Assembly (NCBI RefSeq): GCF_001194135.2
Contig: NC_068983.1
Coordinates: 158,071,102-158,135,101 of the forward strand
Origin: Octopus bimaculoides
Lineage: Eukaryota
Direction of reading: 5' to 3'
DNA: 64,000 bases
Part shown: piece after piece, positions 1-59,252 of the stretch
Layout of the letters: each line of letters opens with the position of its first letter
How positions within the stretch are numbered: the first letter of the stretch is position 1
The notes under the pieces: model-generated
Databases searched by the model: none
Seen by the model: only the letters and a program-made list of their open reading frames with translations
What the model was told of the DNA's origin: nothing
Program-made: the position numbers and the translations under genes

Positions 1-193
1 ACTATAAGTTTCGTCTTTCACTGTAACACCCTCTATGGTATTGATAGGCAAATGTGTAGCTTGGTATTTCTCATCTCTTTACCTTAAGTAAGCCCAAGAA
101 AAAGCATATAAACTAAGTCAAATTATGTATTATGATAAACAAAGTTGAATTCTTCATTTAAGTATAAGATTAACTCTTAACTTCCTGTAAGGA

Positions 194-256
194 AGGCTAC
201 ATCGGTCAGTTACGAGGCTACATCGGTCAGCTACGAGGCTACATCGGTCAGTTACG
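194..256. repeat. Tandem repeat, 21-bp unit x3
   Basis: AGGCTACATCGGTCAG(T/C)TACG repeated three times. Confidence 0.95.
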
Positions 257-837
257 ATATCGTACTAAATTTGTTTACACTCATTTTAAAGAAGTGAGAT
301 ACTCGAATATGAGGAAGCAATCTCAAATCCTTTAATTTTTTTCCCTTCTAGAAGAATTATTGCAGGACTGGGTTTTTGACTCATAGAATTTTGAACAGGA
401 TGTTAAAAGTTAAGTTGAATATCATAGTAAGATATTTAAGCTCTGAGCAAATTATAAGAATGAAACGACAAGGCTAGAGAAATTATTTAAAAAAGAAATG
501 CAATAAGGATCTTTCAGGAACTTTGATGTGAGCGGATAAATATTGTAAAACTAACTTAAAAAATATTTTTTCCCATGCATATCTATATTGATTTTTAGAG
601 TGAAATTTGTTTTGTGAAAAAATCATAACTCTTTATGAATATACTACGTACATTAGGAAAAAATTTCAATCCCAACCTTTAATAAAGCGAGTTGAAATTT
701 GAGTTAAGATGTGTTCTTGTGAAGGTGCATCTTATCCTAAATATATGTAGAAGACAATACGAAAGTTAACATGAAACATTTCAAATAATTCTGAATATCT
801 TTGCTAGTATAATCTTTTATCTCTCATCTTAAACTTG

Positions 838-1210
838 TTTCAGCCATTAAACTGCGGTCATGCTAGAGCGCCTTGGAGAATTTTAGTCGAATGAATCGAC
901 TCCAGTACTTTGTTTCAAGCCTGGTACTTATTCTGTCGATAACTTTTACCGAACTGCTACGTTACGGAGATGCAAACACACCAACACTGGTTGACAAGCG
1001 GTGGTGGGGGAACAAACATAGACACAAAAACACACATACACACATATATATATTCTACGGGTTTCTTTCAGTTTCCGTCTACCAAATCCACTCACAAAGC
1101 TTTGGTTAGCTCGAGGCTAGAGTGGAAGACACTTATGCAAGATGCCATGCAGTGGGACTGAACCCGGAACCATGTGGTTGGAAAGCAAGCTTCTTGCTAT
1201 ACTTTCGCCT
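838..1210 (-). mobile_element. tRNA-derived SINE, family B (octopus OK-like)
   Basis: The reverse complement carries a tRNA-like head (GGTTCAGTCCC B-box) and an internal CA/TA microsatellite. The same body occurs at 13440, 33820, 37450, 39497 and 40600. The family name is a tentative match to published octopus SINEs. Confidence 0.8.
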
Positions 1211-1789
1211 ATAATACGTATCTTGTCATAAAATGAATTATATTAATTTACATATGCATCAACTGCTTAAAGTCATAAAAAACATTTTCTTAAGATTTGT
1301 CTTTTGTTTTGATCGTATGGAAATTTCCCTTTTTCTCGACTTCAAAAACTTGAACAATCTACTTGTTGCAGCATATGATAATGCTGTTTGACAACTACTG
1401 CTACTGTTGTTCCTGTACTGCATTGTTTTGTGGTTTTTGTTGTTGCTAATTTTGTATATGAAGTGTGCTAAGGTTGTTGAAAGTGTCGTTAAGTTCGTTT
1501 TTGTTTTGTTTTGACCGACTTAACATTATTATCTTTTATATATAATTACAGGTAGTATAAATATGATCGTCATCAACACTTTCACCATCATCGGCATTCT
1601 TTCTTTCTTTCTTTCTTTTTTTCTTTCTTTCTTTCTTTCTTTCTTTCTTAATTTCTTCAATGTTTAGTCACATTTTTTTACGTTCTGTCAAAAAGTTCAG
1701 TAAAATAGTATTAGTCGTGGACAGAGATCGATTTCTTTTTCCAAAATATGATGACTTATGTCTGTGTCAGAAATTATTATTATTATCAT

Positions 1790-2067
1790 TATTCGTCTGC
1801 TGCTACGTGCTGAGTTCAAATTCCGCCGAGGTCGACTTTGCTTTCATCATTTCGGGATCGATTAAATAAGTACAAGTTACGCACTGGGGTTGATGTAACT
1901 GACTTAATCCCTTCCTCTAAATTTGAGGCCTTGCGCTTCCAGTAGAAAGAACTATTATTATTATTATTATTATTTTATGTTTGACTTTTGTTTTGCATTT
2001 GTACAAGTTGGATCCAAGTCTCACCCAGAAACCTCAAGAGACAACAAGTTAGAAGTTCATGTAGGTG

Positions 2068-2105
<38 letters not shown>

Positions 2106-4710
2106 GTACGGCGAGCTGGCAGAAGATTCTGGTTTCGATTCCTGGACCGGGCGATGCATTGCGTTCTTGAGAAAATCCAACTCATTTCACGTAGCTACAT
2201 TACTCTCAGCTGGCAAAAATGAATAATCCTGCATTGGACCAGCGTCCCGTCCTGTGGGAGGGGCATATGTCCGCCACAGAATCCAAGAAACCGGCCTTAT
2301 GAGCCTATGAATCGGGAAAGACATTTGATCCCTTTTTAAGGTGGCGAGCTGGCCAAATCGTTAGCACGCCGGACAAAATGCTTAGCGCAGTTTCGTCCGT
2401 CATTACGTTGTGTGTTCAAATTCCACCGAGGTAAGCTTTGCCTTTCATCCTTTCAGGGTCGATAAAATAAGTACTAGTTGAGCACTGGGGTCGATGTCAT
2501 CGATTAGCCTTTTCCTTCCAAAATTTCAGGCCTTGTGCCTATAGCAGAAAGGATCGTTATTATTATTTGGGGTACTAATCCCGCCCATGTCTGCTTTCTC
2601 TTTAGACTTCTGAGGTCAATAAATTAAAACCAGTTAAATACTATCTCGATTTTTGATCATGAATTTGTGGACTTAGTTTCTAACATAGGCACAAGACCAC
2701 AGTTTTGAAGTACGAGTGAACTTTATTTTATCGACTCCGATTGGATGGAAGGCAAACTGACTCAAATTTAAACTCAGAACGAAAAGATCCGTAACTAAGT
2801 ATCCCAATGATTTTTTCGTGTGTTTTGTTTTGTTGATACTCTAACGATTCTGGCAAATTAATATTTTTATTGGTTTCAAGTTCTGGCACTAGGCCAGGGG
2901 TGGCTAGTCAATTACATCGGGCCCAGTACTCAATTGATACGTATTTTATCGACCCCAAAAGGATGAAAGGCAACTTCGACCTCGGTGGAATTTGAACTCA
3001 GAATGCAATGACAGGCAAAATGCTGCTAAGCATTTTACCCGGCGTGCAAATGACTCTGCCAACATCAGTATTATTATCAGCAGTTGCGGAGAAGGGGATA
3101 AGTCGATGACATGACCCCAGTACTCAATTGATACTTATTTTATTCTTTTATACTCTAGGCACAAGGCCCGAATTTTTTGGGGAAGAGGCCAGTCGATTAG
3201 AACGATCCCAGTACGCAACTGGTACTTAATTTATCGGCCCTGAAATGATGGAAGGCAAAGTCGACCTCGGCGGAATTTGAACTCAGAATGTAAGGCCGGA
3301 CGAAATGCCGCTAACCATTTTGCACGACGTGCTAACAGTTCTGCCAGCTCGCCACCTTAATCAGTATTATTATTATTATTAATAATAATTAAGGCGTGCA
3401 AACTAGCAGAACCGTTACCGTGCCGGAAAAAATACTTAGCGGTTTTTCTTCCGGCTTTAGGAACTAAGTTCAAATGTCACCGAAGTCAACTTTACCTTTC
3501 ATCCTTTCGGAGTCAATGAAATATGTTCCAGTAAAGTACCAAGGTCGGTGTAATCAATTCGACCCTCCTCACAAAATTTGAGGTCCTGTACTTACAGCTG
3601 AAATAATATTGTTTGTGATTTCGGCACACTGGCAACATTTTGGGAGCAAAAGGTTAGCTGCAGCCAACAATATCAGAACTTGATTGATACATTATTGTAT
3701 TGACTCTAGAGAAGGGCAAAACTGATTCCAACGAGATTTGAACTCAGAATGTAAATAGTCGTAATTACACATAACAAAACACTCTAACGGTTCTGCCAAA
3801 TCAATTATATCCTTACATACAATAAGCATTTTTAATGTCATAAATCTAGGATCAAAGGTTAGTCGGATTATATCGATTGGGAGCAGTAGGGTTAGACTAG
3901 TACTAGACTGGTACTTTATTTGATCGACTACAAAAGAATGAAATCAATGGAATTTGACCTCAGAATATCAAAATCGATAAGTATATTAGTTATGGCCCTA
4001 TATATTTTGTATTCATATCCCTATGAGGTCGACTTGGCCTTTTATCTTTCCGGGATCGATAAAATAATACAGTAGTGTACAATAGATCTAAAGGACTTCG
4101 ACTACGCCCTCTCCACTCAAATTTCTGGCCTTGTGCCTTTGTTTCATATTACTATTATTATTGAGGGCGGTAGATTGACCGAATCACTAAAACATCAGAC
4201 AAAGTGCTTTGGGGTTTTAGTTCCAGGAGTTCAAATCCTACCGAGTTTAACTTTGTCTCTTATTCTTCCGGAGTTAATACGATAAAGTGCTCGGCAATAC
4301 TAGTGTCAATATAAGCGACCGTTGCTTTCTCCACCTATTAATTCCTGACCTTCTTCTTATGTTAGAAAGTACAGGGCGTTGGCAGAATAATCAAAGCATC
4401 GAAAAAAAACGGCTTGCAGTATTTATTCAGATACTTCAGGCTCTGAGTTCAAATCCTTCCGGTATTAAGAACGTAGAGTACAGGTCAAATAATGTAAAGT
4501 CGATATAAACAACCATTTCCCACTGCTTATGCTAGAAACAACTGTGATCCTGCACTTTACATTCTGAGTTCAAATCTCGTCGGAGTCAACTTCGTCTTCC
4601 ATTCCTCCCGAGGCTGATAAAATAAAGTACAGTGAAATACTGAGGTCGATGTATTCGACTAATTTTTCCCTTTCAAAAATGCTGGTCTTGTACCTCAGTT
4701 AGAAACCATT
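1790..4710. mobile_element. Nest of more than 10 family A SINE copies (octopus OR1/OR2-like, CORE-type) in both orientations
   Basis: Repeated TTCTGAGTTCAAATTCCGCCGAGGTCGACTTTGCCTTTCATCC core on + (about 1790, 2338, 3390, 4020, 4163, 4550) and on - (about 2680-3362, 3620-4000), with (TAT)n tails. Confidence 0.85.
2108..2330 (+). mobile_element. Third SINE family, tRNA-like head with a V-domain-like core
   Basis: The head GGCGAGCTGGCAGAAGATTCTGGTTTCGATTCC (B-box) is followed by GGACCAGCGTCCCGTCCTGTGG, which differs from family A. Confidence 0.45.
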
Positions 4711-5058
4711 GGTATGCATACTTTTATTTCTAATTTTTATTTTACGCATCTATGTATTATGAGACGGATTTGAATAAAGAGGCACAAAAAAAAAAAAAGG
4801 AAGGAAAAGAAAAGAGTTACACTGACATAAGGGTATCTGCTAGAAACTTTCCGAAGGTCCCTGAATGTATGTCACGTGCAAACATTTATGTGTCGTCTGT
4901 GAAGTAGATAGCGTATATGCGTGTGTGTTTGTGATTGTGCTTCAGACAGAGCATGTAAGGAATATACATGACTGTTATTGGGGTGGGACAAGATATATAT
5001 CGTGTGGTTATGTGTGCATGTCAATGTGTGGCTGTGAGATGAATGTCTTTACGTTTGT

Positions 5059-5101
<43 letters not shown>

Positions 5102-5414
5102 AAAAGAAGAATGCTTCAATTTCTTCCACGTGTAAGTTACAGAGACAAGAAATAGTCTTCATCATGTACGTTATATACAACTGTCACATCAATAACATTA
5201 ACAGTAGTTAGTATAAGTAAGACAAGTGAATATTTCTTTGAGAAGGAATACCATAGGCTGGGAGTGATGGTGGTGGTGGGGAATGCATTAAAAGCGGCGA
5301 ACAATTCAGATAAATAAAAAATAATTCATACATCGATCTTTCTGTCTGACTAGCTGTTTTGGTATGTATGTATGTAAATGCACATGTACGTATGAACAGA
5401 TATATCTGTGTATG

Positions 5415-5491
<77 letters not shown>

Positions 5492-6072
5492 NNNNNNNNN
5501 NNNNNNNNNNNNNNNNNNNNNNNNNNNNNNNNNNNNNNNNNNNNNNNNNNNNNNNNNNNNNNNNNNNNNNNNNNNNNNNNNNNNNNNNNNNNNNNNNNNN
5601 NNNNNNNNNNNNNNNNNNNNNNNNNNNNNNNNNNNNNNNNNNNNNNNNNNNNNNNNNNNNNNNNNNNNNNNNNNNNNNNNNNNNNNNNNNNNNNNNNNNN
5701 NNNNNNNNNNNNNNNNNNNNNNNNNNNNNNNNNNNNNNNNNNNNNNNNNNNNNNNNNNNNNNNNNNNNNNNNNNNNNNNNNNNNNNNNNNNNNNNNNNNN
5801 NNNNNNNNNNNNNNNNNNNNNNNNNNNNNNNNNNNNNNNNNNNNNNNNNNNNNNNNNNNNNNNNNNNNNNNNNNNNNNNNNNNNNNNNNNNNNNNNNNNN
5901 NNNNNNNNNNNNNNNNNNNNNNNNNNNNNNNNNNNNNNNNNNNNNNNNNNNNNNNNNNNNNNNNNNNNNNNNNNNNNNNNNNNNNNNNNNNNNNNNNNNN
6001 NNNNNNNNNNNNNNNNNNNNNNNNNNNNNNNNNNNNNNNNNNNNNNNNNNNNNNNNNNNNNNNNNNNNNNNN
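5492..6072. other. Assembly gap (representative of about 10 N-runs, also 7040-7399, 11531-11778, 14287-14689, 15233-16101, 31802-32130, 38132-38376, 42123-42201)
   Basis: N-runs almost always flanked by (TA)n or (CA)n, i.e. short-read breaks at microsatellites. Confidence 0.95.
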
Positions 6073-6371
6073 ATATATATATATATATTTCCCGTCTGGC
6101 CGTATAGCCTTTTCTGTTTGTTTTCCTGTCTTGTTTTTTGTCCGCCAGTACATTCCTCCATGGCAAGGTTTAATTTGTGTATACAAATTTAATTTGCGGT
6201 CCATGGGAAGAGCCGTTTTAACGATGCGTCCTACCCAGCTCTTCGAAACGCCGGTGTTAAAACGGGGGTAGCTGATGAAGAAGAATGAACCCAGATATGC
6301 ACCTATACATACAGGTGGATGTCGGTATGCACATACCTGTACGTATATATGCATATACTAATTTACTATTT

Positions 6372-6406
<35 letters not shown>

Positions 6407-6775
6407 CACACACATGAATGCGTATACATGTACACACACACACACGCATCACGCACATGCAAACGTATACACACCATGTATAGCTATGTTTGTATGTATG
6501 TCGGTAAAAATACATGGTTGATGTATTTGCTTTTGTTTACATGCCTTTCAGGTTCGGGCTATGTGTGTGTGTATTTATAAAGTTTTAAACGTCCCCTTGC
6601 ATACGTGGTAAATGTATGGGTACAGCCTTGGTATATACGCATTTGGTGGAATGAGAGTATACATATATCAGATGGATAATATAAGTATATGTATTTATGT
6701 ATGTATCTGTGTGTGTTTACGTACATATGTATATGTACATGATATATATGCATTATATATATATATACACACACA

Positions 6776-6810
<35 letters not shown>

Positions 6811-6811
6811 A

Positions 6812-6979
6812 CGTGGGGTTGCTGAAAGGTTCCTGGCTATAAGAGTATCCCGAAAGGCCTGGTTCGAGGTTCAACCTTCCGAGTTCTTTTACAGGGCTTA
6901 GAAACACCGAAGGAACCCTGGAATTGATCCTCCTGTATTTTCTTTTACCAGAAGCCGAGAACTTTTCAGCATCTCCACG
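6812..6979 (+). mobile_element. Tc1/mariner-derived MITE
   Basis: TIRs of about 27 bp (CGTGGGGTTGCTGAAAGGTTCCTGGCT / AGCCGAGAACTTTTCAGCATCTCCACG) with TA on both sides; homologous to 13176-13392. Confidence 0.8.
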
Positions 6980-7399
6980 TATGTGTATATGTATATGTAT
7001 TTACATGAACGTATATAGTTTATCTAAGAGTATATATATNNNNNNNNNNNNNNNNNNNNNNNNNNNNNNNNNNNNNNNNNNNNNNNNNNNNNNNNNNNNN
7101 NNNNNNNNNNNNNNNNNNNNNNNNNNNNNNNNNNNNNNNNNNNNNNNNNNNNNNNNNNNNNNNNNNNNNNNNNNNNNNNNNNNNNNNNNNNNNNNNNNNN
7201 NNNNNNNNNNNNNNNNNNNNNNNNNNNNNNNNNNNNNNNNNNNNNNNNNNNNNNNNNNNNNNNNNNNNNNNNNNNNNNNNNNNNNNNNNNNNNNNNNNNN
7301 NNNNNNNNNNNNNNNNNNNNNNNNNNNNNNNNNNNNNNNNNNNNNNNNNNNNNNNNNNNNNNNNNNNNNNNNNNNNNNNNNNNNNNNNNNNNNNNNNNN

Positions 7400-7455
<56 letters not shown>

Positions 7456-7525
7456 ATGTATACTGTGTATTAATTCTGATATAAGCAATCACAGAAAAAA
7501 AATCTTTACATATGTGTGTGTGTAT

Positions 7526-7556
<31 letters not shown>

Positions 7557-7745
7557 GAATTATCCATGTAAACAACTATTTACTCACGTTTGTAATATAC
7601 GTGTAGATGTGTATGTATGTGTGTGTATATATATGTGTATATAATCATAACGCAGGTCCCATAAATGAACAAGGGAATTACTAGTGATGCATCGTTTGAT
7701 TAGGGACAAGCTTACGCACAGTCGCAGATTCTTATACATCTTTAT

Positions 7746-7804
<59 letters not shown>

Positions 7805-7878
7805 TATGCACATACACGCACAGATCTCTCTCTCTCTCTCTNNNNNNNNNNACATACATATGCACATACACGCACAGA

Positions 7879-7946
<68 letters not shown>

Positions 7947-8361
7947 CATACATGCATACACATGTCTGTATGTATAGGAAAAGAGACAGAATGAGAGAAT
8001 GAAATAGCTAGATGCATATATTGAGACAGACAGGTAGCTATATACAGAGCAAGAGAGAAGTGTATGTGAGTAGCAATATGTTTTTTTTTTGCATAAAATT
8101 CATAAAACATATATATACTCATAAAATATATATACTTTGTCATTATGTATAGTATGTGTGCGTGCAGGCGCGTGTAATTTGTAGGTCTGTGTTTATGTTG
8201 TGCATCGTATACGTGTACGTGTGTGTGTGTGTGTTTATGTTAGCATATGTGTGCTTGTAAGGGAGAAAGAATTTGCTGAAATAAAGTTATATATGGTAGA
8301 AATGTCTAGGAAAAAGTTAATCGATGAGATGATAATATTTGGTAGTGAAAAGTGTACTTAC

Positions 8362-8480
8362 CACCACATTCCAGTTGTGGCTGACGTCTCTATCACACTG
8401 TATATACAAAAACAAGCGAAAATAATGGAGACCGGCGAAAAAACTGATCTGCCATTCCACATAACAGAACTTTGGGCCAT
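8362..8480 (-). CDS. Wnt6: First coding exon of a Wnt-family ligand, most like Wnt6 (signal peptide plus G-M-W-W)
   Basis: The minus strand reads ATG(8480) MAQSSVMWNGRSVFSPVSIIFACFCIYSVIETSATTGMW-TG|GTAAGT. There is an in-frame stop upstream and no earlier in-frame ATG, a hydrophobic h-region (VSIIFACFCIYSVI), small residues before a likely cleavage site, and a consensus donor at 8361 in phase 2 inside the second Trp. A phase-2 intron within the WW motif is conserved in Wnt genes, and G[LM]WW directly after the signal peptide is the Wnt6 pattern. Exon 2 was not found in the window, so the paralog call is tentative. Confidence 0.6.
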
Positions 8481-9310
8481 TTCTCCGACGATCTTAAGAA
8501 ATCCTGGTATTGTATAGTCGGTGCTTGGTGTTATATCTGCCTTCTATATAATGTTTTAGTAGTTGTATTTAGTAAGTTTTATTCCGAATTTACTATTATA
8601 TAATAATATTAATTAACTTATTTAATCCTTTTTCATCCATCACACATTCAAAAATCCATAAATATATATATTTACATAAGTATAAATAGAACTACATATA
8701 TAAAAAATATATACATATATGTATGTGTGTGTGTGTGTGTGCGCGTGTACGTGCGCGCTCATGTAAGTGTGTGTGCGTGTGAGCGTGCGCGCGCGTGTGT
8801 GTTTGTGAGAAGAGAGAGAGAGAGGGGAAAAGTGTGATATTAGAAGGGAAAGAAATATAGAAGAGACTTGTCTATTTACAGATTGTGCACTTATAAATAA
8901 ATAGATTGATGTATTGACAAACGTGAAGTCAAAGTGATAGATAAATAGACAGACAGATAAGATAGAGAGGGGGAGAGAAGGAGGAGGGAAGAGGATAAGA
9001 TAGATGGATAGAGAGATAGCTGTACACTGTATTCAACACAACGTATTTGTTGCTAATGCTCTCTTGAATTTAATGATGATAAAAGTACAAGTAGGATTAA
9101 TTTATAAGTAGGAAGAACTTAACTATGAAGTATATCTCTCAGCACACGCAAATACGCGAGTAATATTTTAAGTTATTCTTAAGAAGGTTGCATAGGTATT
9201 TTTAATGGAATTTTTGAACCAATGGATAAATGCACGAGTAAAATTTTCTTTTGAAGATACAATTATTTCAACTCTATATATAATCATGTATGTATGTATG
9301 TATGTATGTA

Positions 9311-11379: not shown

Positions 11380-13047
11380 AAAATTAATTAAGGTACTCAG
11401 AAACGTGGATGTTTGTACATTTAAAGATTTTTATTAATGTCACTGTACGTTTTTCAAATTGTTTTCAAAACAATTTGAAAAACCTACACGACTAGGTGAA
11501 GAGCGCTTCATTTAATATGTGACATTAATANNNNNNNNNNNNNNNNNNNNNNNNNNNNNNNNNNNNNNNNNNNNNNNNNNNNNNNNNNNNNNNNNNNNNN
11601 NNNNNNNNNNNNNNNNNNNNNNNNNNNNNNNNNNNNNNNNNNNNNNNNNNNNNNNNNNNNNNNNNNNNNNNNNNNNNNNNNNNNNNNNNNNNNNNNNNNN
11701 NNNNNNNNNNNNNNNNNNNNNNNNNNNNNNNNNNNNNNNNNNNNNNNNNNNNNNNNNNNNNNNNNNNNNNNNNNNNNNATATATATATATATATACATAC
11801 ACACAAACATGTATTCTATACACGCACATATATGTGTGTTTATATGTGTAAGGTGAGTATGGGGGTTCAATGCTAATCTTTCTTTTTCCTATTTTCTTTG
11901 TTATTTAGCAATCACCACCACCACCACCGCCCTACATTACCATCATCATCATCATTCGCATCATCCTTAACGTAACCACCGCCAACATATCCATCATTGT
12001 CGCCGTCGCCAGTTACAAATGTAGAAGTAGTAGTAGTAACATTTTTTTTCTTTGCAAATCCAAGCATGTTTGGGTCAGTGGTGTGTTTGAATATTTATGC
12101 GTGTAATGTGCCCGTGTGTGTGTTTGTGTACGTGTGTGTATGCATGTATTTATCTATGTGTAAATATAATGCGTTCGTTATACGTTATTTTTATATTTAT
12201 TATCATTTTAATCAAGAATTTCATTTGTGTTGTGACTTAATCTATCTGGGAATGTGTATGTTTGTGTACACACATATATACAAGAAGTATAAGAAGTTGC
12301 AGTTACTGTTTGTAGACCGACTAAAGACTAGCACCCCTCTTGCATGCTATCTGTTTTTAATGCGATTGTAGGAAAAAAAACCGAAGTAGTATGCATTCTT
12401 TTGGTGGCAAGCAAGAAGAGTAAATAGAAATATACAGCCTCTGAGTTTTAAATCTCTCTAAAGTGATTTTTAAAATTATTATTTATACCTCCATTTTGCA
12501 CACAGATTTGTTTAATGGATGTTAGAAGTAGGCAGAAAGTTTGCCTTCATACATTACTGTATCTGGTTTGAGGATCGTGTTTATCAAAAACAATCTCGTC
12601 CTATCCCAGACACTGCCTTCTAAACAAGAGATTGTAAAATATACATGGATGTTTGGTGTTGATTTAATGTACAAAACCGTCTCTTGTTGTAAAATAGGCT
12701 TTGTTGTTAGCCAAAATATCTAAATTATTGTTGGATTAATAAAATAATTTCGTCATATAAATGAATTTATGTTTGCTGGTCGATTCCTGTGTGTAATATA
12801 TAATGAAACCTTTCTTACGAGAAATCTAAACGAAATAATCAAAATCTACAAGCACACAAATATACACACAACCCTCCCCATACACATGTTCATGTCCCAC
12901 AAGAGTATCTTACAAAATTACATACATGTCAGTATGTGCATGCAAATATGTTTTTCTCTTTTTTTTTTTTACTTGAAGCCAAATACAATCATGCACGGCT
13001 GGAATTATTTTGTATGTACTGCGTTGTGTTGTGTTGTTGTATAGTAT

Positions 13048-13827: not shown

Positions 13828-14874
13828 CAACTGGCTTCTTTCAGTTTCCGACTACCGAATCCACGAGGAAAGCTTCGGTCGGCCCGGGACTATAGTGGGA
13901 CACACTTGCCCAAGATGCCATGCAGTGGGATGGAATCCGGAACCCTGTGATTGAGGCTCTTCCTACCACACACATTCATGCATTCATAAACAAGAATGAT
14001 ATACATAAATGCATATATAATGCAAACGTGAGTGTAAGCATGTCATTGTTTTGCTCCAGGTCAGCCCTTATCATAAAAAGGCCTATGCTCAAAGGCGTTC
14101 CAGTCATGGGTGACCTGACTTTTGTATATCAGGCATTATATTGTTCAATTTAGCTTTCATTTATTAAAAACGGTTGAATGCAACATGAGGGACATTTAGC
14201 AATTATTTCTAGCAGATCCAGCGACGATGTAGAGGTTCCCTCTCCCCTGTATATATATATGTATATATATATATATATATATGTATNNNNNNNNNNNNNN
14301 NNNNNNNNNNNNNNNNNNNNNNNNNNNNNNNNNNNNNNNNNNNNNNNNNNNNNNNNNNNNNNNNNNNNNNNNNNNNNNNNNNNNNNNNNNNNNNNNNNNN
14401 NNNNNNNNNNNNNNNNNNNNNNNNNNNNNNNNNNNNNNNNNNNNNNNNNNNNNNNNNNNNNNNNNNNNNNNNNNNNNNNNNNNNNNNNNNNNNNNNNNNN
14501 NNNNNNNNNNNNNNNNNNNNNNNNNNNNNNNNNNNNNNNNNNNNNNNNNNNNNNNNNNNNNNNNNNNNNNNNNNNNNNNNNNNNNNNNNNNNNNNNNNNN
14601 NNNNNNNNNNNNNNNNNNNNNNNNNNNNNNNNNNNNNNNNNNNNNNNNNNNNNNNNNNNNNNNNNNNNNNNNNNNNNNNNNNNNNNNNNTAATATAAACG
14701 TGATACTGAAAATGTTTGACACGTTTACTATTCACATAGTATTTACACTTTTGTTATCAAATGAAGTAATTTTTTTTATATAAAAATAAAACGATCCGTC
14801 TGTGTCACTCTATGTATGTATGTATGTATGTATGTATGTATGTATGTATGTATGTATGTATGTATGTATGTATG

Positions 14875-15232: not shown

Positions 15233-16110
15233 NNNNNNNNNNNNNNNNNNNNNNNNNNNNNNNNNNNNNNNNNNNNNNNNNNNNNNNNNNNNNNNNNNNN
15301 NNNNNNNNNNNNNNNNNNNNNNNNNNNNNNNNNNNNNNNNNNNNNNNNNNNNNNNNNNNNNNNNNNNNNNNNNNNNNNNNNNNNNNNNNNNNNNNNNNNN
15401 NNNNNNNNNNNNNNNNNNNNNNNNNNNNNNNNNNNNNNNNNNNNNNNNNNNNNNNNNNNNNNNNNNNNNNNNNNNNNNNNNNNNNNNNNNNNNNNNNNNN
15501 NNNNNNNNNNNNNNNNNNNNNNNNNNNNNNNNNNNNNNNNNNNNNNNNNNNNNNNNNNNNNNNNNNNNNNNNNNNNNNNNNNNNNNNNNNNNNNNNNNNN
15601 NNNNNNNNNNNNNNNNNNNNNNNNNNNNNNNNNNNNNNNNNNNNNNNNNNNNNNNNNNNNNNNNNNNNNNNNNNNNNNNNNNNNNNNNNNNNNNNNNNNN
15701 NNNNNNNNNNNNNNNNNNNNNNNNNNNNNNNNNNNNNNNNNNNNNNNNNNNNNNNNNNNNNNNNNNNNNNNNNNNNNNNNNNNNNNNNNNNNNNNNNNNN
15801 NNNNNNNNNNNNNNNNNNNNNNNNNNNNNNNNNNNNNNNNNNNNNNNNNNNNNNNNNNNNNNNNNNNNNNNNNNNNNNNNNNNNNNNNNNNNNNNNNNNN
15901 NNNNNNNNNNNNNNNNNNNNNNNNNNNNNNNNNNNNNNNNNNNNNNNNNNNNNNNNNNNNNNNNNNNNNNNNNNNNNNNNNNNNNNNNNNNNNNNNNNNN
16001 NNNNNNNNNNNNNNNNNNNNNNNNNNNNNNNNNNNNNNNNNNNNNNNNNNNNNNNNNNNNNNNNNNNNNNNNNNNNNNNNNNNNNNNNNNNNNNNNNNNN
16101 NTGTATATAC

Positions 16111-19100: not shown

Positions 19101-22100
19101 AAGACCAATGTTTCTGCATATCACACAAGAGCTTATAATAACAGAGTTAATGGTATATACAAAAGAAATTATTGTATATTGATATACACATCGGCAAATG
19201 AATTTGTAAAACGGCGCAATTATTAGACAGACTTTAAAATATCGACTATCCTTACACATTTGGAATGTTTTTTTATTCATTCCCATAAATACTAATGTTC
19301 CATCTAAATATATAAAGCTGGTAATTCCCTTGCACACCCATAAGTTTTGTTTTAGAGAACTGAGACCCTACTTCATTCCACTTTGAGATAAGATACAAAC
19401 TACTGAAGTTCCTTTAACGTAGAAAGAAAAGTTGTTACTGTTCGTTCTAGATATATACTCCTTTCTGTCCCGCTGTCTGAGTTGAGATAAGGTATTTATA
19501 TTAGCTTCTGCATCTCATATAAAACTCAAAGATTTTTGAAGATAGAGCAATAGGTTGTTAAATGTTTTGTTGTCGTTGAGTATATTGTAAAGCAATAATC
19601 CCGAAAAGTTGTTGGATCCTTAAGTGAAGATATGTGGTGTTAATCTCGCTTAAATGTATTCTAAGTAAAGCCACACTTAACCAAACGCTCTATGGTACAC
19701 ATCCTATCACCGGTGGTGTGTTGTCATTTTGACCAGTCAGTCAAGCAGGTACTAGGAGGTGTTCTTCACCTGAAGCAGTAGATGTTCAAATCTTTTTAGT
19801 TTGCAGTGTTATATTAAAAACTTCTCAATTTTGGATGATAATGGTAGTCATTAAGATTATGATTAGTCTAGTTTTCAACTATGGAGCTTCCTTCCTGAAA
19901 TTAACTTCTTTCTTTACATGGAAGAAAATTGAAACCGTGGCGTTCATTTCATTCCGAAGTCTTGGTAATATGAAATAAATCTGCATCAGCTGGCATTTGA
20001 AAGTAGTTTACAGACAAACTTTCAACCTCAGAATTCTAAAATATATTCATTTTTGTCTTTTTTGATGACACACTGGAACATTTAGCCAAAACAGTCTAAG
20101 TTTATTAGTGTTAGTGAAGAATTAAAGTATGTTCTGTTACTGGAAATGACATGTAAGGTGTTTTAATGTAGAAGGAGAAATAAATTTTGATAGCTGTTGC
20201 TTTAGCAAGATTATCAGTGACATAAAATAGTTTGAACTGTGGATCGACACAGATTTGCAGACTTGTCTTTCTTCAAAATTACTTAGCTTTAGCCTAACTC
20301 TAAAATCTCAGAAGAAACGTCCAAGAGATCAGAATTATGAAACATTAACTGAATAAAACCATATTAATGGCTTCCATAGTTTATAGAATCAAAAAGTATC
20401 CTTGTTTTAGATCACAGACCTGAAGCAGCGTTGACATAATCTTCCAAGGGTCAGTAGAGTATGCAGGGCTTGATAATACTTTAGGAGTCATAACGGAAGG
20501 GACTATAGACGATCAAGAGTTCCTTCAGTGATTGACAAACGAAAAATATTTGCAGACGCTGATTAAATCTGTTTGATCTTCGCACACCAAAGTAACTGGA
20601 TAAATAAAATATATTTTGTGGGGAATTTCAACCATGTTTCGTGGTCTGCTACCACAACAGCTCCTTTATAGGATCCAGTTAGCTCAAGACATCATCAGGA
20701 GGAACCACGTCTGGTTTCGGCCCCTACTCCTCTACCGTTTTGACGTGGCGGGGCCACCCCCTTTCGGAGGTGTCTTCGGCTCTGGTGTTGGGTGCATGTC
20801 TTCTTTCACTGTTTGTGACTGTTCTAATTCAACTGTGGGATGTCCCTCGCTATGGTTATTTTCCAGGAGGTTCTGGCCACACGTCTTACGGTTCATCAAC
20901 CCGCGTTGTTGAATTACTTTCTTCTGACATACCTTCCCTTGGTGGATTAGGATCCAGTTAGCTCAAGACATCATCAGGAGGAACCACGTCCGGTTTCGGC
21001 CCCTACTCCTCTACCGAGTGACTTCAAGTTCAATATCCTTCAGCATCAATAAAAGTATTCTGAGGTCAAGTCATTTGACTATTCTTACTCTTCCATCATA
21101 TGCACTATACTATTTACTAATGAGATATATACATAAGCTTTTCTTTGTAATTAGTATCTTACTAGTATTGAAAAAGATCTGTCTTTAGAAAGTCAACAGC
21201 TCTTTACCGATTGCTAATACTATTTTACCTGCCGCTCTCAATTCAATGTGTTAGACACCAAACAATTTTTTATATCAACGAGCCAGTTCTCCTTTGCAAC
21301 TTTTTACTGAACGAAATGACTAGAATACATCTCAGAACCTGTTCCCGAAAGAAATCCACTCTCCAAAGACCGACAACTAATCGAATTTATAACTTACATT
21401 TCAAAGTGACGATTTGGTGCATCGAATGGTAGTGAAATCATTTATGTACACTTTGTATTTACACTTGTCCCTCTAAGTTCAAATTCCGCTGTGGTAAAAT
21501 TCTCATTTTATTCTTTTAGGATAATTAATATCACCATATTATATATGTACGGAGATGGATTAGATTAACAATATTCGCTCCCTAAAAAAGACAGCGAGCT
21601 GGCAGAAACGTTAGCACGCTGGGCGAAATGCTTAGCGGTATTTCGGCTGTCTTTACGTTCTGAGTTCAAATTCTGCCGAGGTCAACTTTGCCTTTCATGT
21701 TTTCGGGGTTGATAAATCAAGTACCAGTTGCATACTGGGGTCGATATAATCGACTGCTCCCCCCCCCCCACCAATTTCGGGCCAAGTGCTCTGAGTAGAA
21801 AAGAATATTCACTCCCTGAAAGATATACGAAGACATAAGTTCCAGTTAAGACTTTTTAGAACAAATTCGATTCGTCATTGCATTAATTTCAACGAACCTA
21901 TTTTCAAATAGAATATTTGTTTGATAATCATTTTATTGGAAAAGACGTTTTAATATCTTCTCGGTAAGGTTGTGCTGTATTTCACCAAAACATTCAGTGC
22001 AATGATGTCGTACTATCTCGGCCAATTCTATTGCGAGAAGTCTTAATGAAATTGTATGGCAAACGTACATTCTTGGGTATTAGCAAAATATGTCATACTT

Positions 22101-52115: not shown

Positions 52116-55026
52116 AGAAAGTTTATTATTAGATTTATTCTATATAAAAGCTGTAGAAAAGTTCTGGTAGATTGGAGTAGGTGCATCTTCAAGATAATAA
52201 TTACATGTGTTTATATCTGTGCAAGGGCGTATATGTTACTGATCCTGTTCAAACTTCCGGTATTTTATGAACCACAGTCTCTGAATATATCAGAATATAT
52301 TTAGTCTAAATATTATAGTTACTTCGATAATCATACGCACAAATATTCATACTTAGACTGTATAATAATTCTATAATTAAACATAGATATGTACACAAAT
52401 ATATTCTCATGAATGAAATAGGCAAACGTCTAATGAAGAGATTTAGCGTCCTTATTATGGGATTAATGATACCATAATACGTACCAGGACACTATTTATT
52501 CCTCGACAACCCAACTATATCTTTCTTCAAGGAAAATAATTTCATTAAGTCATTTATATCGAGAAGTAAACAGAATCAGTAATGTCAAATATTAGTCATA
52601 GTATTTCTTATTATATCTTGATCATTTTTTAGAGTTACAGGGGTTTATCATAGCTAAGAAAAAATATTGATTCTTTTATAAGAAAATACTATTCATGTAT
52701 GTTCTATGAAACAATGCGTCTCGGCGGAAGAAGGTGGTTTTGTATTGAGAGTAAACTGTATTGCTCTACTTCACGAGAGGGCATTTAGTTCAAAATATGT
52801 TTTACCAGAAATTTAACAATGACTACTCTTTTGGTTGTTATTATCGTTTTTGTTTTTCATATTTGTATACTAGTCTATGCAATAAAACTGTTACGTGTAC
52901 AACGTATTGTATTGAATATTTGGGTGTATAATGATAAGTAAGTACTTGCACAGTATATACCAATTCATTATTTATGGGAAGAGAGAGAAGGAGAGAGATA
53001 GAAAAAAATAAGGATGTTTGATAAGAGCGTGAAATTACTGCAAAACTAGGTATTGAGAAATTTAGTACAAGAATTTTTTAAAAATCATTAATCTAACAAA
53101 AGCCCCGCGCTAAAAATTAAATAAAATCTACATTGCATTTCTATTTCCTTTGTATTGTGTAGGAATGGCAAGTTTTTATCTTCACTAGAGTCTGAAACTT
53201 CATATACCTATTTTCTACTGAATTTTATTCAGTGTTCTTCGTCATACAAATATAATGCTTTTTATTCTACCTATTTCCTGCTGGTGAATAAAAATATATT
53301 TGGACCACTTGAAACCTAACTAAAACGAGATCAAATTTAATCAGTTTATCCAGAGGACTATCAAAAAATAATAGCAATTAGTAGAAAGAAAGCCGACAAT
53401 TTGTCAGAAAAGTTCGAATAATATATGTAGAAGACATTTTTTACTTTAGGAATATAAAATTCCTTGAATTGTAATCTTGTCACCTTTCATCGGTCTGAAA
53501 AAGTTATTAACGAAGCGAAGTTGGCAAGAAGTAGAATATAAACGAAACGAAGTGGTTTACATAAAATTATTTTACAAGAAATTTGATTGGTTGCTTATCT
53601 GTTTTTCCACGTGTGAAATTTACTGGAATTATTAAAATAATGAGCGATTTTGTCAGTTGTTATCTGAGAAGTCTGTAATATTTTTTTATCTTTTATTGTC
53701 TCAATCAATTTAAATGTCAAACCTCAGTTTTGAAATGTATTCTGAATTATTGATACGTTCAGATGCATTCGATCACTGACCCTCCCTTAACATTTACATT
53801 TCAGAATGGCATTTAATCAATTGCCTTTTATAGCCGACAGTTTTCTGTTTGATATGTTTATACATATTTTCTTGATACTATATTTAGTTCTATGCTATTT
53901 CGAACGATTTTATGAAACTATATTAAAATGCAGTCATTTTTCACACGTAGATATACATTTAAGTGCTTCGCAGCTACATCGAGTTCGATTACTCTACACG
54001 GAATCTTGAAAAAATATCTTCTTAGTCTTAGGTTGACGAATACGTTTGCAATGAAAACTGGATTGATACTGTTGGTGAAACTCACTTTTTTAAAAAATCT
54101 AGGATATTTGAATCATTTCAGTTTCTTGTTTGTTTTACTTTCGAAATTTAAAAACTGAAACTCATCTCTTCTAGTCGGATTAGTCGATAGGGTCCAGAAG
54201 ATGGCCTTTAGACATTAGTTTTCAAAATGCAACATTTGTTAGTTTTCAAATAACGTCTTTCGGTCTTAAATAAATACAAAATGGCAAACAAAGAATTAGT
54301 TATTAACGTAATATTTCGGCCATTTGCTATTATTTTGTCCGGTGACATTTTCGTCCCCCAAATTGTGGACTTTTTAAAACTTTTATTCCCTGTGCTTTAT
54401 TTCTATTCAACTGCGTTACTACCCCAACTCACTATGTGGCTTTATTTTTGTCAAACTGGAAGCTACATTCAATGCAATGCCAGGTTGCTTATTTGTAGAC
54501 TTATAAATCTTTTAAATCGCGCTCCGACTATATATTACATTAATTACATAATTCCGCCGATCTGACCGTGTTGCTAGAGAAGAGAAGCCTGCAATCACGT
54601 TTACCTGCAATACCAAAGGAGCCATAGTCACAGAATGAACCAAGCTGCAAGTGCTTTGAGTTCTAAAGAATTTAACGCAATTATGTAGAAGGTACAATAT
54701 AATGATATAATCAGTGATGTATGTCTGGTCATCCAAAGTAGAAAACTAGCAAAAGTACATATGTTTTCCTATAGCTAAATAGAATCACTATATTCCATTA
54801 TATTCTCTGTTTGAGTTAAGTTGTAGACGAGCAGACTCAAGTGCATTTGAATACTGCAATTAAATGGTGTTATGGCGAGGGAAAATAACATTGGTGCTGA
54901 TCACAATAATGGGAATAATACTCGAAGTAGATACAAAGTAATGGATTTATCAAAGAAATGAGAATGGGTTTCAAGGACTGCTCATATTTAATGATTATTA
55001 TTTTTATTGTTTCCGTATCTTTAGAT

Positions 55027-55080
55027 GTGTCCTTGACTGTGTTTTGATGGGTACTTTTTCCCATCGTCTTCAGGTGACAC
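55027..55080 (-). ncRNA. Degenerate minimal type I hammerhead ribozyme motif (Penelope-type)
   Basis: GUGUCAC-CUGAAGA-C-GAUGGG(AAAAAGUA)CCCAUC-AAAAC-ACA-GUC-AAGGACAC: perfect 6-bp stem II and a GUC cleavage triplet, but G12 is changed to A and stem I is imperfect. Confidence 0.45.
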
Positions 55081-56606
55081 TTCTTGTCATGAAGACAGGG
55101 GAACACTGATTGAAATATTCAACAACATATCTAAAGTTACAAAAGAGTCCGAAAAACACATCATCATAAACTCCTCCAGGATAAAAAAGATATGTAAGTT
55201 TTGTCTGAAATGATGTTCCAGTTTTCATTGCTAAGTTATTAATTAGTCCGAGGCTATCATAGAAGACGTTTCCTAAGATGACACAAAGAGGAATCGAACT
55301 CGGTTGCGAAGAGAATTTCTTAAGTGCACTTTTATGCCATTCTTCTTTAGGGAAGAAAAGAAAACAAAAAAGAAGAAAGTCTGAGCTGATGAAAAATATT
55401 TGTATTGAGTACATTATATCATCAGCAAATGAAAACTATTGACTTGAATTTAACGCAATTCTGGGAAACTACCGAAAGAGGGAGAATAAAGAAAAGAATG
55501 CTTGAAGAAATGATGTGATTATTGTGTTCAAAGAGAGAGGAGGAAAAATAGGTGCAGACAGTAAGGAAGATTTTGAAATATGAATGAGCGGATAAGGGAA
55601 CGCGTGGGTGAGGGTATGTGAGTTCGAGTGAGTGAGTGAATGAATGAATCTATGAGTGTGTTAGATAGACAGAAGAATGGAATAAAGCAATGTCACATTT
55701 TCCTGTTTAAGACATTTTTTAATCTCTAATTGGTCTTAAGAGTGTGACATTTTAGTATTTTATTTTGTTTTATATTTTAGCTGAATCTGCTATTTTTTTT
55801 CGTTTATCTCTTACGAAGTTTAGCTATACAACAATCAGTATGTATTCTAGCAAAATCGTTTAAATTCGCCTAACACGCTCCCCGCACTCTTAAATCAACA
55901 TTTATTTTGTAGTGCATTTGTCATTTAGACACACGAATACTTGAATTGGGAAAATGATGTTTGTTTATCAAAAGTAAAAAATGTTTATATAATAGTGTGT
56001 CAATTAACGTTTTTTTATGTCTTAGTCTACTTAATTTGCGGGCAATTTACAACAAATAAGTGTTAAGTATCTCATCTTAAATTGAAATGCCAAATTCGTA
56101 TCAGTGTCATTTATTTTTAAAGATTCTCTGTTAGCAAATATATATTTAGTTATTATTCATTTACTTGGCAAATTTACATTCATTTATTATATTAAATGGA
56201 AATTGAAGAAATTTAACACAAAATCTATTGTAATTATATAAAATGTTTCATTTGCAATGTAATACCTAGAATGTAAAGCATAAATTAAAATGCTTCAGTT
56301 TTATAGGAGTGGGAAAATAGTCTATTTTGACACCCATTTCCAAAACATTAAGAATAAAACATATCCACAAAAGAGCCGAAACATTAGAAACTTTGGTCGA
56401 TATGAACTTAGGAACACAACGGCGCCCGTCGTATAAAAAAATATAATTTGGTATGTTAACTGCATGATTATGAAGTTCGCTTTGCACTGTATGGGATTCC
56501 CTCTGCACAGCACACTAGACAACTGTATTCTACAACAATAAACGCATGTTCGTAAATAACTTCAGTGGAGTTTGTAAGACAGAAACTTCTAAGAAGGCTG
56601 ACTACA

Positions 56607-58555: not shown

Positions 58556-59252
58556 TGATTTTGTGAACTTGTGTACTGTCCGTTCCTTTAATTAGATAGA
58601 CTTAATAGGTGGACCCATGACTGTCTGCGCTGATCACTGGCTCTTGAACTTCTTAGGCCTTGGAGATGAGGTATAACACAAATGCGTGAATTGAGTTTCG
58701 TTTCAGTATTCTAACTATACGGCTACTCTTTATTCCCATTCTACTAGATAGGAAAAGTGTCTTCTTTGACTTCAAGCGCTCCCAGCCGATCCGAACGGAG
58801 CAGACAGCGATATTAATCTCCTTCAAATCGTGTGCCAACTGCCTAGGTGTCACTTTACACGCACTTTCCAATATTCAAAATTGCACTGTGACCATAGTTC
58901 AGGTCTGCAATGAGCTTACGAATAGTGACCTGTCTGTCCTCGCGAATAATTTCGCCCATTTGCTTGTGGTTCGCGTCGGTGGTCATAGTTGATGCTCTCC
59001 CACTGCATGATTTGACAGCATTGTGATTTTGTGAACTTGTGTACTGTCCATTTCTTTAGATAGGTTTGATGGACGGACTCATGACTGTCTGCGCTGATCA
59101 CTGACTCTTGAATTTCTTAGACCTTGGACATTGTTCCTGACATTGGTGTCGTCTTCATAAACAACCAATAGTCTTTTGGAGATATCGGACAGCCTGCACT
59201 CCTCCTTTGTTAGTGACTTGATGACGACAGCATACTTCAGCTCGGAATCCAT
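58556..59252 (-). pseudogene. Mariner transposase pseudogene (N-terminal HTH region) with an internal duplication
   Basis: ATG at 59252: MDSELKYAVIKSLTKEECRLSDISKRLLVVYEDD; further on SCSGRASTMTTDANHKQMGEIIREDRQVTIRKLIADL and KVTPRQLAHDL (degenerate KV.ARWVP..L); 58556-58647 duplicates 59024-59131. Confidence 0.8.

What the first reader, a model, noticed from the sequence alone, without database searches (positions are those of the whole stretch)
8362..8480. Hidden Wnt first exon missed by the ORF track
Seen: a 39-codon signal-peptide ORF ending GMW-TG|GTAAGT. Known: Wnt genes conserve a phase-2 intron inside the WW after the signal peptide, and GLWW-AVGSP is the Wnt6 junction. Inference: this window holds the promoter, the first coding exon and at least 8 kb of intron 1 of a cephalopod Wnt (likely Wnt6). 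That reframes the rest of the window as upstream regulatory territory of a developmental signalling gene.
Basis: partly seen in the sequence, partly recalled or inferred. Interest (0 to 1): 0.75.

Follow-up and report, generated by a model that had tools for sequence, protein, structure and literature searches.

The report
Wnt-style first exon look-alike, unproven
A short reading frame in octopus DNA looks exactly like the start of a Wnt signalling gene, but it is not Wnt6 or Wnt1, and whether it starts any gene could not be settled here.

Summary
On the minus strand, 8480..8362 reads ATG, 39 codons, then TG|GTAAGT. It encodes MAQSSVMWNGRSVFSPVSIIFACFCIYSVIETSATTGMW(W), which has a signal-peptide shape.

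Haliotis Wnt1, Octopus bimaculoides Wnt1 and O. sinensis Wnt6 all end exon 1 at ...TGG TG|GTAAGT, a phase-2 intron in the second W codon. Their first introns are 1.5, 37 and 63 kb. The Wnt6 junction is GLWW|AVGSP. The window is octopod DNA, because it shares interspersed repeats with Octopus loci.

"Likely Wnt6" is refuted. Wnt6 starts with a near-invariant LYFYL..P.NIIGLWW in squid and Octopus, and the peptide lacks it. Wnt1 is also excluded, because Octopus Wnt1 has KKVKKSRFRAVRWW. The window is not collinear with either locus.

Nothing positive links the exon to any other Wnt. The window holds no Wnt exon, and the peptide has no homologue in the protein searches. Signal-peptide-like ORFs with donors occur by chance in this window.

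My rough estimates:
- chance look-alike: about 0.5
- real first exon of an untested Wnt paralogue (Wnt2, Wnt5 or another): about 0.3
- exon of an unrelated gene: about 0.15

Either way the feature is ordinary.

The parts
8362..8480 (-). Candidate first coding exon: ATG + 39 codons + 2 bases (MAQSSVMWNGRSVFSPVSIIFACFCIYSVIETSATTGMW + TG of a second W). Read without splicing, it is a 40-aa ORF ending at TAA 8360-8358.
   Evidence: It is a unique sequence, with no copy elsewhere in the window or in 228 kb of Octopus loci. It has no protein homologue and no Pfam family.
8354..8361 (-). Consensus splice-donor-like site GTAAGTAC immediately after TGGTG. The 13-mer TGGTGGTAAGTAC (8366-8354) is identical to the O. 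sinensis Wnt6 exon 1 / intron 1 junction.
   Evidence: Not shown to be used, because no transcript data were available.
8475..8485 (-). Start-codon context gagaaATGGcc (A at -3, G at +4). This is the first in-frame ATG after an in-frame TAG 21 codons upstream.
8544..8550 (-). TATATAG heptamer 70 nt upstream of the ATG. It is the only promoter-like element near the ORF, and it is unremarkable in DNA of 33% G+C rich in (TA)n.
   Evidence: read directly. CpG observed/expected around the ORF is not unusual, and it is not raised at the two verified Octopus Wnt first exons either.
1..8361 (-). The stretch that would be intron 1. It holds microsatellites, three N gaps and SINE-like repeats, with no Wnt exon and no Pfam-recognisable coding segment on the minus strand.
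   Evidence: tblastn with six human WNTs gave nothing better than E about 1. Pfam on all open minus-strand segments of at least 35 aa found 0 families.

Best explanation
Most likely this is a fortuitous open reading frame in non-coding octopod DNA, intergenic or intronic, that copies the anatomy of a Wnt first exon. In this AT-rich sequence, short ATG-initiated ORFs are common and tend to encode hydrophobic, signal-peptide-like stretches. One of them happens to end in TGGTG followed by a consensus GTAAGT. On this reading nothing is translated or spliced here, and the rest of the window is ordinary repeat-rich non-coding sequence.

Shown: the ORF and donor exist; it is not Wnt6 or Wnt1; there is no homologue and no downstream Wnt exon in the window; look-alike ORFs occur by chance nearby.

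Inferred: that it is not used. I hold this only slightly above the rival that it is the real first exon of another Wnt paralogue.
For: - No protein among the 90%-identity cluster representatives shares three 5-residue words with the peptide.
- phmmer against 1.84 billion representatives gave only a spurious 38-repeat protein.
- The same kind of query would have found the squid representatives for the two verified Octopus Wnt exon-1 peptides. These share 4-5 five-residue words next to the WW (my comparison of the sequences).
- The window has no Wnt-like exon anywhere and no Pfam domain downstream.
- The peptide lacks the subfamily motifs of Wnt6 (NIIGLWW) and Wnt1 (basic stretch + RWW).
- Decoys with the same build occur in the same window at 52819+ and 63105+.
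- The rough chance expectation is about 10 such composites per 2.7-Gb genome. Against this, only about 2-3 untested Wnt genes are expected to carry a strict WW junction (plus my assumption about paralogues).
- There is no CpG or G+C signal of a promoter.
Against: - The junction matches verified molluscan Wnt first exons very closely. TGGTGGTRAGT occurs four times in the 334 kb of mollusc DNA held here. Three of those are the Wnt1 or Wnt6 exon-1 donors and the fourth is this site.
- The 13-mer TGGTGGTAAGTAC is identical to the Octopus Wnt6 junction.
- The WW lies 33-40 residues from a Met with a good start context, after a well-formed hydrophobic core, which is the usual Wnt layout.
- Octopus Wnt first introns are 37-63 kb, so a missing exon 2 is expected for a real Wnt.
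- The protein searches index only cluster representatives. In both families checked, the Octopus proteins were hidden behind non-octopus representatives, so the negative search is weaker than it looks.
Confidence: 0.5

Rival explanations
1. This is the genuine first coding exon (signal peptide up to the WW) of an octopus Wnt paralogue other than Wnt1 and Wnt6. Candidates include Wnt2, Wnt5 or WntA, which carry a WW after the signal peptide in other animals (my recollection of vertebrate sequences). It would be spliced in phase 2 to an exon 2 lying tens of kb to the left of the window.
For: - The junction anatomy is identical to three verified molluscan Wnt first exons.
- The peptide is signal-peptide-like with a good ATG context.
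- Very long first introns in Octopus Wnt genes explain the absent exon 2.
- Octopus gene models do miss Wnt first exons: the O. bimaculoides Wnt6 model P0244 lacks exons 1-2.
- 'TTGMWW' resembles hemichordate Wnt1 'TTGKWW' and crinoid Wnt6 'TTGLWW', which is weak evidence.
Against: - There is no homologue of the peptide in either protein search. For Wnt1 and Wnt6, the residues next to the WW are conserved between squid and octopus strongly enough that such a search would have hit.
- There is no positive evidence for any Wnt beyond the pattern that caused the site to be picked.
- Only a few paralogues are left that could fit.
Confidence: 0.3
2. This is a real exon of some unrelated gene. It could be the first coding exon of a secreted or membrane protein, or an internal exon entered at the AG of tatatAG at 8545-8544, or a non-coding RNA exon. 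The WW would then be coincidental.
For: - The ATG context, donor and hydrophobic core are all good.
- The frame is open from the AG/TAG 21 codons upstream.
- The sequence is unique and not part of a repeat.
Against: - No homologue was found.
- There is no recognisable downstream coding segment in 8.3 kb.
- By my recollection, first exons that encode signal peptides usually end in phase 1, not phase 2.
- No transcript evidence was available.
Confidence: 0.15
3. This is the first exon of Wnt6, or of Wnt1. It could be the canonical exon or a distal alternative first exon.
For: - The donor 13-mer is shared with Octopus Wnt6.
- A 51-nt local alignment around the junction reaches about 30 nt into the intron. 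With the 13-mer core held fixed, 17 of 3000 flank shuffles scored as high, p about 0.006.
Against: - The canonical Octopus Wnt6 exon 1 encodes MRFQTILVGLYFYLMFPVNIIGLWW and lies in another locus (L003:10001-10074).
- Octopus Wnt1 exon 1 encodes ...MKCIFLILLLCVSINYSSKKVKKSRFRAVRWW (L004).
- None of the four O. sinensis Wnt6 isoforms or the Wnt1 isoforms starts with the peptide.
- The window shows only repeat matches to the 108-kb Wnt6 and 95-kb Wnt1 loci, with no collinear match.
- The flanks on their own are not significantly similar.
Confidence: 0.02

Closest known systems
Octopus sinensis Wnt6, exon 1 (P0246 / XP_036368300.1; locus L003:10001-10074)
   Same: Both have an ATG, a short signal peptide ending G-x-W-W, and a phase-2 split of the second W codon. 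The 13-mer TGGTGGTAAGTAC at the junction is identical. The Wnt6 first intron is very long (62.7 kb).
   Different: The Wnt6 peptide is MRFQTILVGLYFYLMFPVNIIGLWW, with the LYFYL..P.NIIGLWW motif conserved from vertebrates to molluscs. The candidate has none of it, is 15 residues longer, and lies in a different, non-collinear region.
Octopus bimaculoides Wnt1, exon 1 (P0254 / XP_014782987.1; locus L004)
   Same: The exon ends ...AGG TGG TG|GTAAGTA, a phase-2 intron in the second W. Intron 1 is 37 kb and exon 2 begins G|ACA CTG (W|TL).
   Different: Wnt1 carries the protostome basic stretch KKVKKSRFRAVRWW before the junction. The candidate has the acidic or neutral ETSATTGMWW.
Haliotis rufescens Wnt1, exon 1 (P0102; locus L001:10443-10543)
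   Same: The exon ends ...CAG TGG TG|GTAAGTG and exon 2 starts ...TTGCAG|G TCT TTG. This is the same intron position and phase, which shows that the junction is conserved in molluscs.
   Different: Intron 1 is 1.5 kb, and the N-terminus is basic (KKGRHKGRMKGIQWW).
Chance signal-peptide-like ORFs with donor sites in the same window (52819+, 63105+)
   Same: Each is an ATG ORF of 37-39 codons with a strong hydrophobic core, ending at GTAAGT or GTGAGT in phase 2.
   Different: They do not end in WW, and their ATG contexts and c-regions are poorer.

Membership tests
Wnt ligand gene (Pfam PF00110) | Exons encoding the Wnt domain (RWNC, CKCHG, C-terminal cysteine knot) downstream of the signal-peptide exon on the same strand | tested here: inconclusive
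   None is present in the window (tblastn with 6 human WNTs; Pfam on minus-strand open segments 1-8361).
Wnt ligand gene (Pfam PF00110) | N-terminal signal peptide encoded by exon 1 | tested here: met
   The peptide has an n-region with Arg, a 14-19-residue uncharged hydrophobic core and a small-residue c-region. It passes a hydrophobicity filter that 0.6% of positions pass. SignalP was not run.
Wnt ligand gene (Pfam PF00110) | Phase-2 intron splitting the second W codon of the post-signal-peptide WW (TGG TG|GTRAGT) | tested here: met
   The candidate reads ATG TGG TG|GTAAGTAC. The same junction occurs in Haliotis Wnt1, O. bimaculoides Wnt1 and O. sinensis Wnt6. Use of the donor is not shown.
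Wnt ligand gene (Pfam PF00110) | An annotated or transcript-derived protein that carries this N-terminus joined to a Wnt domain | tested here: not met
   No candidate shares three 5-residue words with the peptide. phmmer against 1.84 billion representatives gave only a spurious repeat protein. The exact ORF is not on record. Caveat: only cluster representatives are indexed.
Wnt6 subfamily | N-terminal motif L(Y/F)F(Y/I)L..P.NI(I/G)GLWW followed by AVGSPL | tested here: not met
   The motif is present in molluscs, brachiopod, onychophoran, hemichordates, fish, squid (P0144) and Octopus (P0246). It is absent from MAQSSVMWNGRSVFSPVSIIFACFCIYSVIETSATTGMWW.
Wnt6 subfamily | Position in the Wnt6 locus | tested here: not met
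   There are only interspersed-repeat matches of at most about 430 bp to the O. sinensis Wnt6 gene +/- 10 kb (L003, 108 kb) and the O. bimaculoides Wnt6 3' part (L002).
Wnt1 subfamily | Protostome N-terminal basic stretch (K/R-rich) + G/A-x-(K/R/Q)-WW, and position in the Wnt1 locus | tested here: not met
   Octopus and Argonauta Wnt1 have SSKKVKKSRFRAVRWW|TLAHAES. Other protostomes are similar. The candidate has no basic stretch. There is no collinear match to the O. bimaculoides Wnt1 locus L004.
Other Wnt subfamilies (Wnt2, 4, 5, 7, 9, 10, 11, 16, A) | Match of the peptide to the octopus orthologue's N-terminus, or linkage to its exon 2 | not testable with these tools
No octopus sequences of these paralogues were obtained, and the papers searched held none.

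The most novel reading that the evidence does not exclude
The ORF is a real but unannotated distal first exon. It would give an octopod Wnt paralogue, or an extra lineage-specific Wnt copy, a signal peptide unrelated to those of its orthologues. It would be spliced across a very long intron, which would mark a separate promoter for a developmental signalling gene.
Probability: 0.07. Interest if true: 0.4.

Novelty: not a real feature. Interest (0 to 1): 0.2.

Why it matters
If it is real, it would be a routine annotation repair: the first exon and promoter position of one octopus Wnt gene. That would help people studying cephalopod development, but it would not be new biology. If it is chance, the lesson is methodological. 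In AT-rich genomes, signal-peptide-like ORFs ending at consensus donors are common, so a two-residue motif plus a splice site cannot by itself assign a gene family. The by-products are solid. The WW-splitting phase-2 intron is confirmed in three molluscan Wnt genes. Octopus Wnt first introns are 37-63 kb. The current O. bimaculoides Wnt6 model really does lack its first exons.

Tried and rejected
- Peptide against the 5.8-billion-protein word index: nothing.
- Peptide by phmmer against 1.84 billion representatives: one hit, P0001. It is a 4132-aa protein whose 38 weak repeat matches add up, so I rejected it as spurious.
- Exact look-up of the 40-aa ORF and of ten other window ORFs, hoping to reach the source contig and extend leftwards: none is on record.
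- Pfam on minus-strand open segments left of the exon: none.
- Pfam on suspected transposon remnants: nothing significant.
- Degenerate DNA pattern for ETSATTGMWW + donor in JGI metagenome contigs: 0.
- Literature search for cephalopod Wnt sequences or for the peptide string: no sequences held. Cho et al. 2010 is not in the library.
- CpG observed/expected as a promoter signal: uninformative, because the verified Octopus Wnt first exons show no enrichment either.
- A stricter home-made signal-peptide filter: rejected, because it failed two of the three verified Wnt exons.
- Apparent nucleotide homology to the Wnt6 junction (z about 8 with plain shuffles). It shrank to p about 0.006 once the shared 13-mer was fixed, and the flanks alone are not significant. 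I do not count it as homology.
- tRNA and Rfam scans of the window: nothing.

Full report
**1. The observation**

On the minus strand the window reads gagaaATGGCCCAAAGT...ACAACTGGAATGTGGTG|GTAAGTACAC. ATG is at 8480-8478 and 39 full codons follow. The next codon, TGG, is split after its second base if the GT at 8361-8360 is used as a donor. Read through, it is a 40-aa ORF, MAQSSVMWNGRSVFSPVSIIFACFCIYSVIETSATTGMWW, ending at TAA. This ATG is the first one in an open frame that starts 21 codons upstream, right after a TAG. The peptide has one Arg in its n-region, a 14-19-residue uncharged hydrophobic core and a small-residue c-region. The description is correct.

**2. What the window is**

The window has about 33% G+C, ten N gaps, and many (CA)n, (TA)n and (GA)n tracts. 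It has no long clean ORFs, no tRNA or Rfam hits and no Wnt-like exon in any frame. It shares interspersed repeats of about 160-430 bp, at 84-94% identity, with the Octopus sinensis Wnt6 locus and the O. bimaculoides Wnt1 locus. None of eleven window ORFs is in the protein or gene collections, so I could not reach the source contig or read beyond the left end of the window.

**3.

I fetched three molluscan Wnt genes with their DNA.
- Haliotis rufescens Wnt1 (P0102, L001): exon 1 ends CAG TGG TG|GTAAGTG. Exon 2 begins TTGCAG|G TCT TTG.
- O. bimaculoides Wnt1 (P0254, L004): exon 1 ends AGG TGG TG|GTAAGTA. Exon 2 begins TTTTCAG|G ACA CTG. Intron 1 is 37.0 kb.
- O. sinensis Wnt6 (P0246/P0243, L003): exon 1 ends CTT TGG TG|GTAAGTACGG. 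Exon 2 begins ATGCAG|G GCA GTT GGT, that is W|AVGSP. Intron 1 is 62.7 kb.

So the phase-2 intron inside the second W and the Wnt6 junction GLWW|AVGSP are both confirmed. An exon 2 missing from the 8.3 kb left of the candidate is exactly what a real octopus Wnt would show. In the 334 kb of mollusc DNA I held, TGGTGGTRAGT occurs four times. Three are these Wnt donors and the fourth is the candidate. Those loci were chosen because they contain Wnt genes.

**4. Wnt6 and Wnt1 are excluded**

I searched with a Haliotis Wnt6 fragment that I derived from the gene next to Wnt1. The search showed that the Wnt6 N-terminus is almost invariant across Bilateria: M.(I/V)Q..L..LYFYL(I/M)(F/C)P.NIIGLWW|AVGSPLVMDPN.
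- Squid (Doryteuthis pealeii, P0144) has ...ALYFYLICPANIIGLWWAVGSP.
- Octopus sinensis isoform X3 (P0246) has MRFQTILVGLYFYLMFPVNIIGLWWAVGSPLDMDPN.

The candidate peptide has none of this motif. None of the other O. sinensis, O. vulgaris or O. bimaculoides Wnt6 isoforms begins with it.

The cephalopod Wnt1 cluster covers O. bimaculoides, O. sinensis, O. vulgaris, Argonauta hians and squid-like transcripts. It starts ...MKCIFLILLLCVSINYSSKKVKKSRFRAVRWW|TLAHAES. This carries the basic stretch seen in the other protostome Wnt1 sequences with a recognisable WW. The candidate has an acidic or neutral ETSATTGMWW instead.

The window gives only repeat hits, with no collinear match, to the whole O. 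sinensis Wnt6 gene +/- 10 kb and the O. bimaculoides Wnt1 gene +/- 10 kb. "Likely Wnt6" is therefore refuted, and Wnt1 with it.

**5. Is it some other Wnt?**

What remains is indirect.

Against a Wnt:
- The peptive has no relative among the 90%-identity cluster representatives or among 1.84 billion 50%-identity representatives. The only hit there was a spurious repeat protein.
- This negative is softened by one fact. Octopus Wnt1 and Wnt6 proteins are cluster members behind non-octopus representatives, so their own N-termini are not indexed.
- Even so, in both families the residues next to the WW are conserved enough between squid and octopus (4-5 shared five-residue words) that the same query would have found the representative.

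For a Wnt:
- The junction is a perfect copy of the real ones.
- The start-codon context is good.
- The WW sits at a normal distance from the Met.

**6. Chance**

- The window itself holds 37 ATG-ORF + GTRAGT combinations. Two other non-repetitive hydrophobic ones are among them. One, at 52819+, also has 39 codons in phase 2.
- Markov estimates put TGGTGGTRAGT at 0.03-0.1 per window, or about 1000-4700 per 2.7 Gb.
- About 0.6% of positions have a signal-peptide-like ATG ORF upstream in frame.
- That gives an order of 10 composites per octopus-sized genome by chance. Against this stand perhaps 2-3 untested Wnt genes with a strict WW junction.
- I then allowed for the extended donor (GTAAGTA), the purine at -3 and the negative protein searches.
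- This gives roughly 0.3 for a real non-Wnt1, non-Wnt6 Wnt exon, 0.15 for an exon of some other gene and 0.5 for chance. These are rough figures from small samples and my own assumptions, not measurements.

**7. Things that looked promising and were not**

- A 51-nt alignment between the candidate and the Wnt6 junction runs about 30 nt into the intron. With the shared 13-mer fixed it has p about 0.006, and the flanks alone are not significant. Wnt paralogues are far too old for intronic homology, so I treat it as coincidence or a shared splice-site context.
- CpG content does not mark the verified Octopus Wnt first exons, so it cannot be used here.
- The TATATAG 70 nt upstream (8550-8544) is unremarkable in this DNA.
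- There is no independent support for a promoter, or for calling the remaining 55 kb regulatory territory of a Wnt gene.

**8. Verdict**

The sequence feature is real and was well read, and the family knowledge behind the inference is correct. The specific assignment to Wnt6 is wrong, and assignment to any Wnt is unproven. I rank a fortuitous look-alike slightly ahead of a genuine first exon of another Wnt paralogue. Either outcome is ordinary: a non-feature, or a routine annotation of a known gene family. One tblastn of the scaffold to the left, or a look at RNA-seq junctions, would settle it.

Noticed in passing
window 36809-37247, 28046-28460, 45131-45357, 21588-21809, 2336-2503, 3141-3360, 827-1195, 39590-39746, 46817-46977: These are copies of interspersed (SINE-like) repeat families. 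They recur many times in the O. sinensis Wnt6 locus (L003) and the O. bimaculoides Wnt1 locus (L004) at 84-94% identity, which identifies the window as octopod DNA. No tRNA-like head was found by ARAGORN.
   Followed up: partly
window 52819-52937 (+): A decoy ORF: ATG, 39 codons (MTTLLVVIIVFVFHICILVYAIKLLRVQRIVLNIWVYND), phase 2, then a GTAAGT donor. It is signal-peptide- or TM-like. This shows that the ORF-plus-donor part of the finding arises by chance in this window. A second decoy lies at 63105 (+).
   Followed up: partly
L002 (O. bimaculoides CM046623.1:35,554,712-35,559,351) versus L003 (O. sinensis): The O. bimaculoides Wnt6 model (P0244, XP_014782989.1, 287 aa) starts MILLSMYVYS... It lacks the canonical exon 1 (MRFQTILVGLYFYLMFPVNIIGLWW) and exon 2 that O. 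sinensis isoform X3 has. This is a genuine case of a Wnt first exon missing from a gene model, but at a different locus.
   Followed up: partly
L004 (O. bimaculoides CM046623.1:35,618,982-35,714,412): A second annotated Wnt gene (359-aa product) on the opposite strand spans the whole 95-kb Wnt1 locus, with no Wnt exon of its own inside it. Either a >95-kb intron encloses Wnt1, or the gene model is chimeric.
   Followed up: partly
L001 (Haliotis rufescens) 10001-46481 and 50435-56481; O. bimaculoides CM046623.1: Wnt1 and Wnt6 lie tail-to-tail (convergent). They are 4 kb apart in Haliotis and about 70 kb apart in O. bimaculoides, so the arrangement is conserved while the spacing has grown about 17-fold.
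   Followed up: no
window 8316-8374 (-) versus L003:10056-10107: A 51-nt local alignment between the candidate junction and the O. sinensis Wnt6 exon 1 / intron 1 junction extends about 30 nt into the intron (CACAACTGGAATGTGGTGGTAAGTAC-ACTTTT-CACT-ACCAAATATTAT). With the 13-mer core fixed, p is about 0.006, and the flanks alone are not significant.
   Followed up: yes
window 58656-59255 (-) and 50951-51609 (+): By eye, the open segments look like remnants of a mariner-type transposase N-terminus (MDSELKYAVVIKSLTKEECRLSDISKRLLVVY...) and of a retroelement C-terminal Cys/His motif (KCNRFHESICHILAGC). Pfam gave no significant match, so this remains an impression.
   Followed up: partly
window 5492-6072, 7040-7399, 7842-7851, 11531-11778, 14287-14689, 15233-16101, 31802-32130, 38132-38375, 40313-40322, 42123-42201: These are N gaps. 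Most of those I looked at are bordered by (TA)n, (CA)n or (GA)n microsatellites, that is, assembly breaks at simple repeats. Three of them lie in the putative intron just left of the candidate exon.
   Followed up: no
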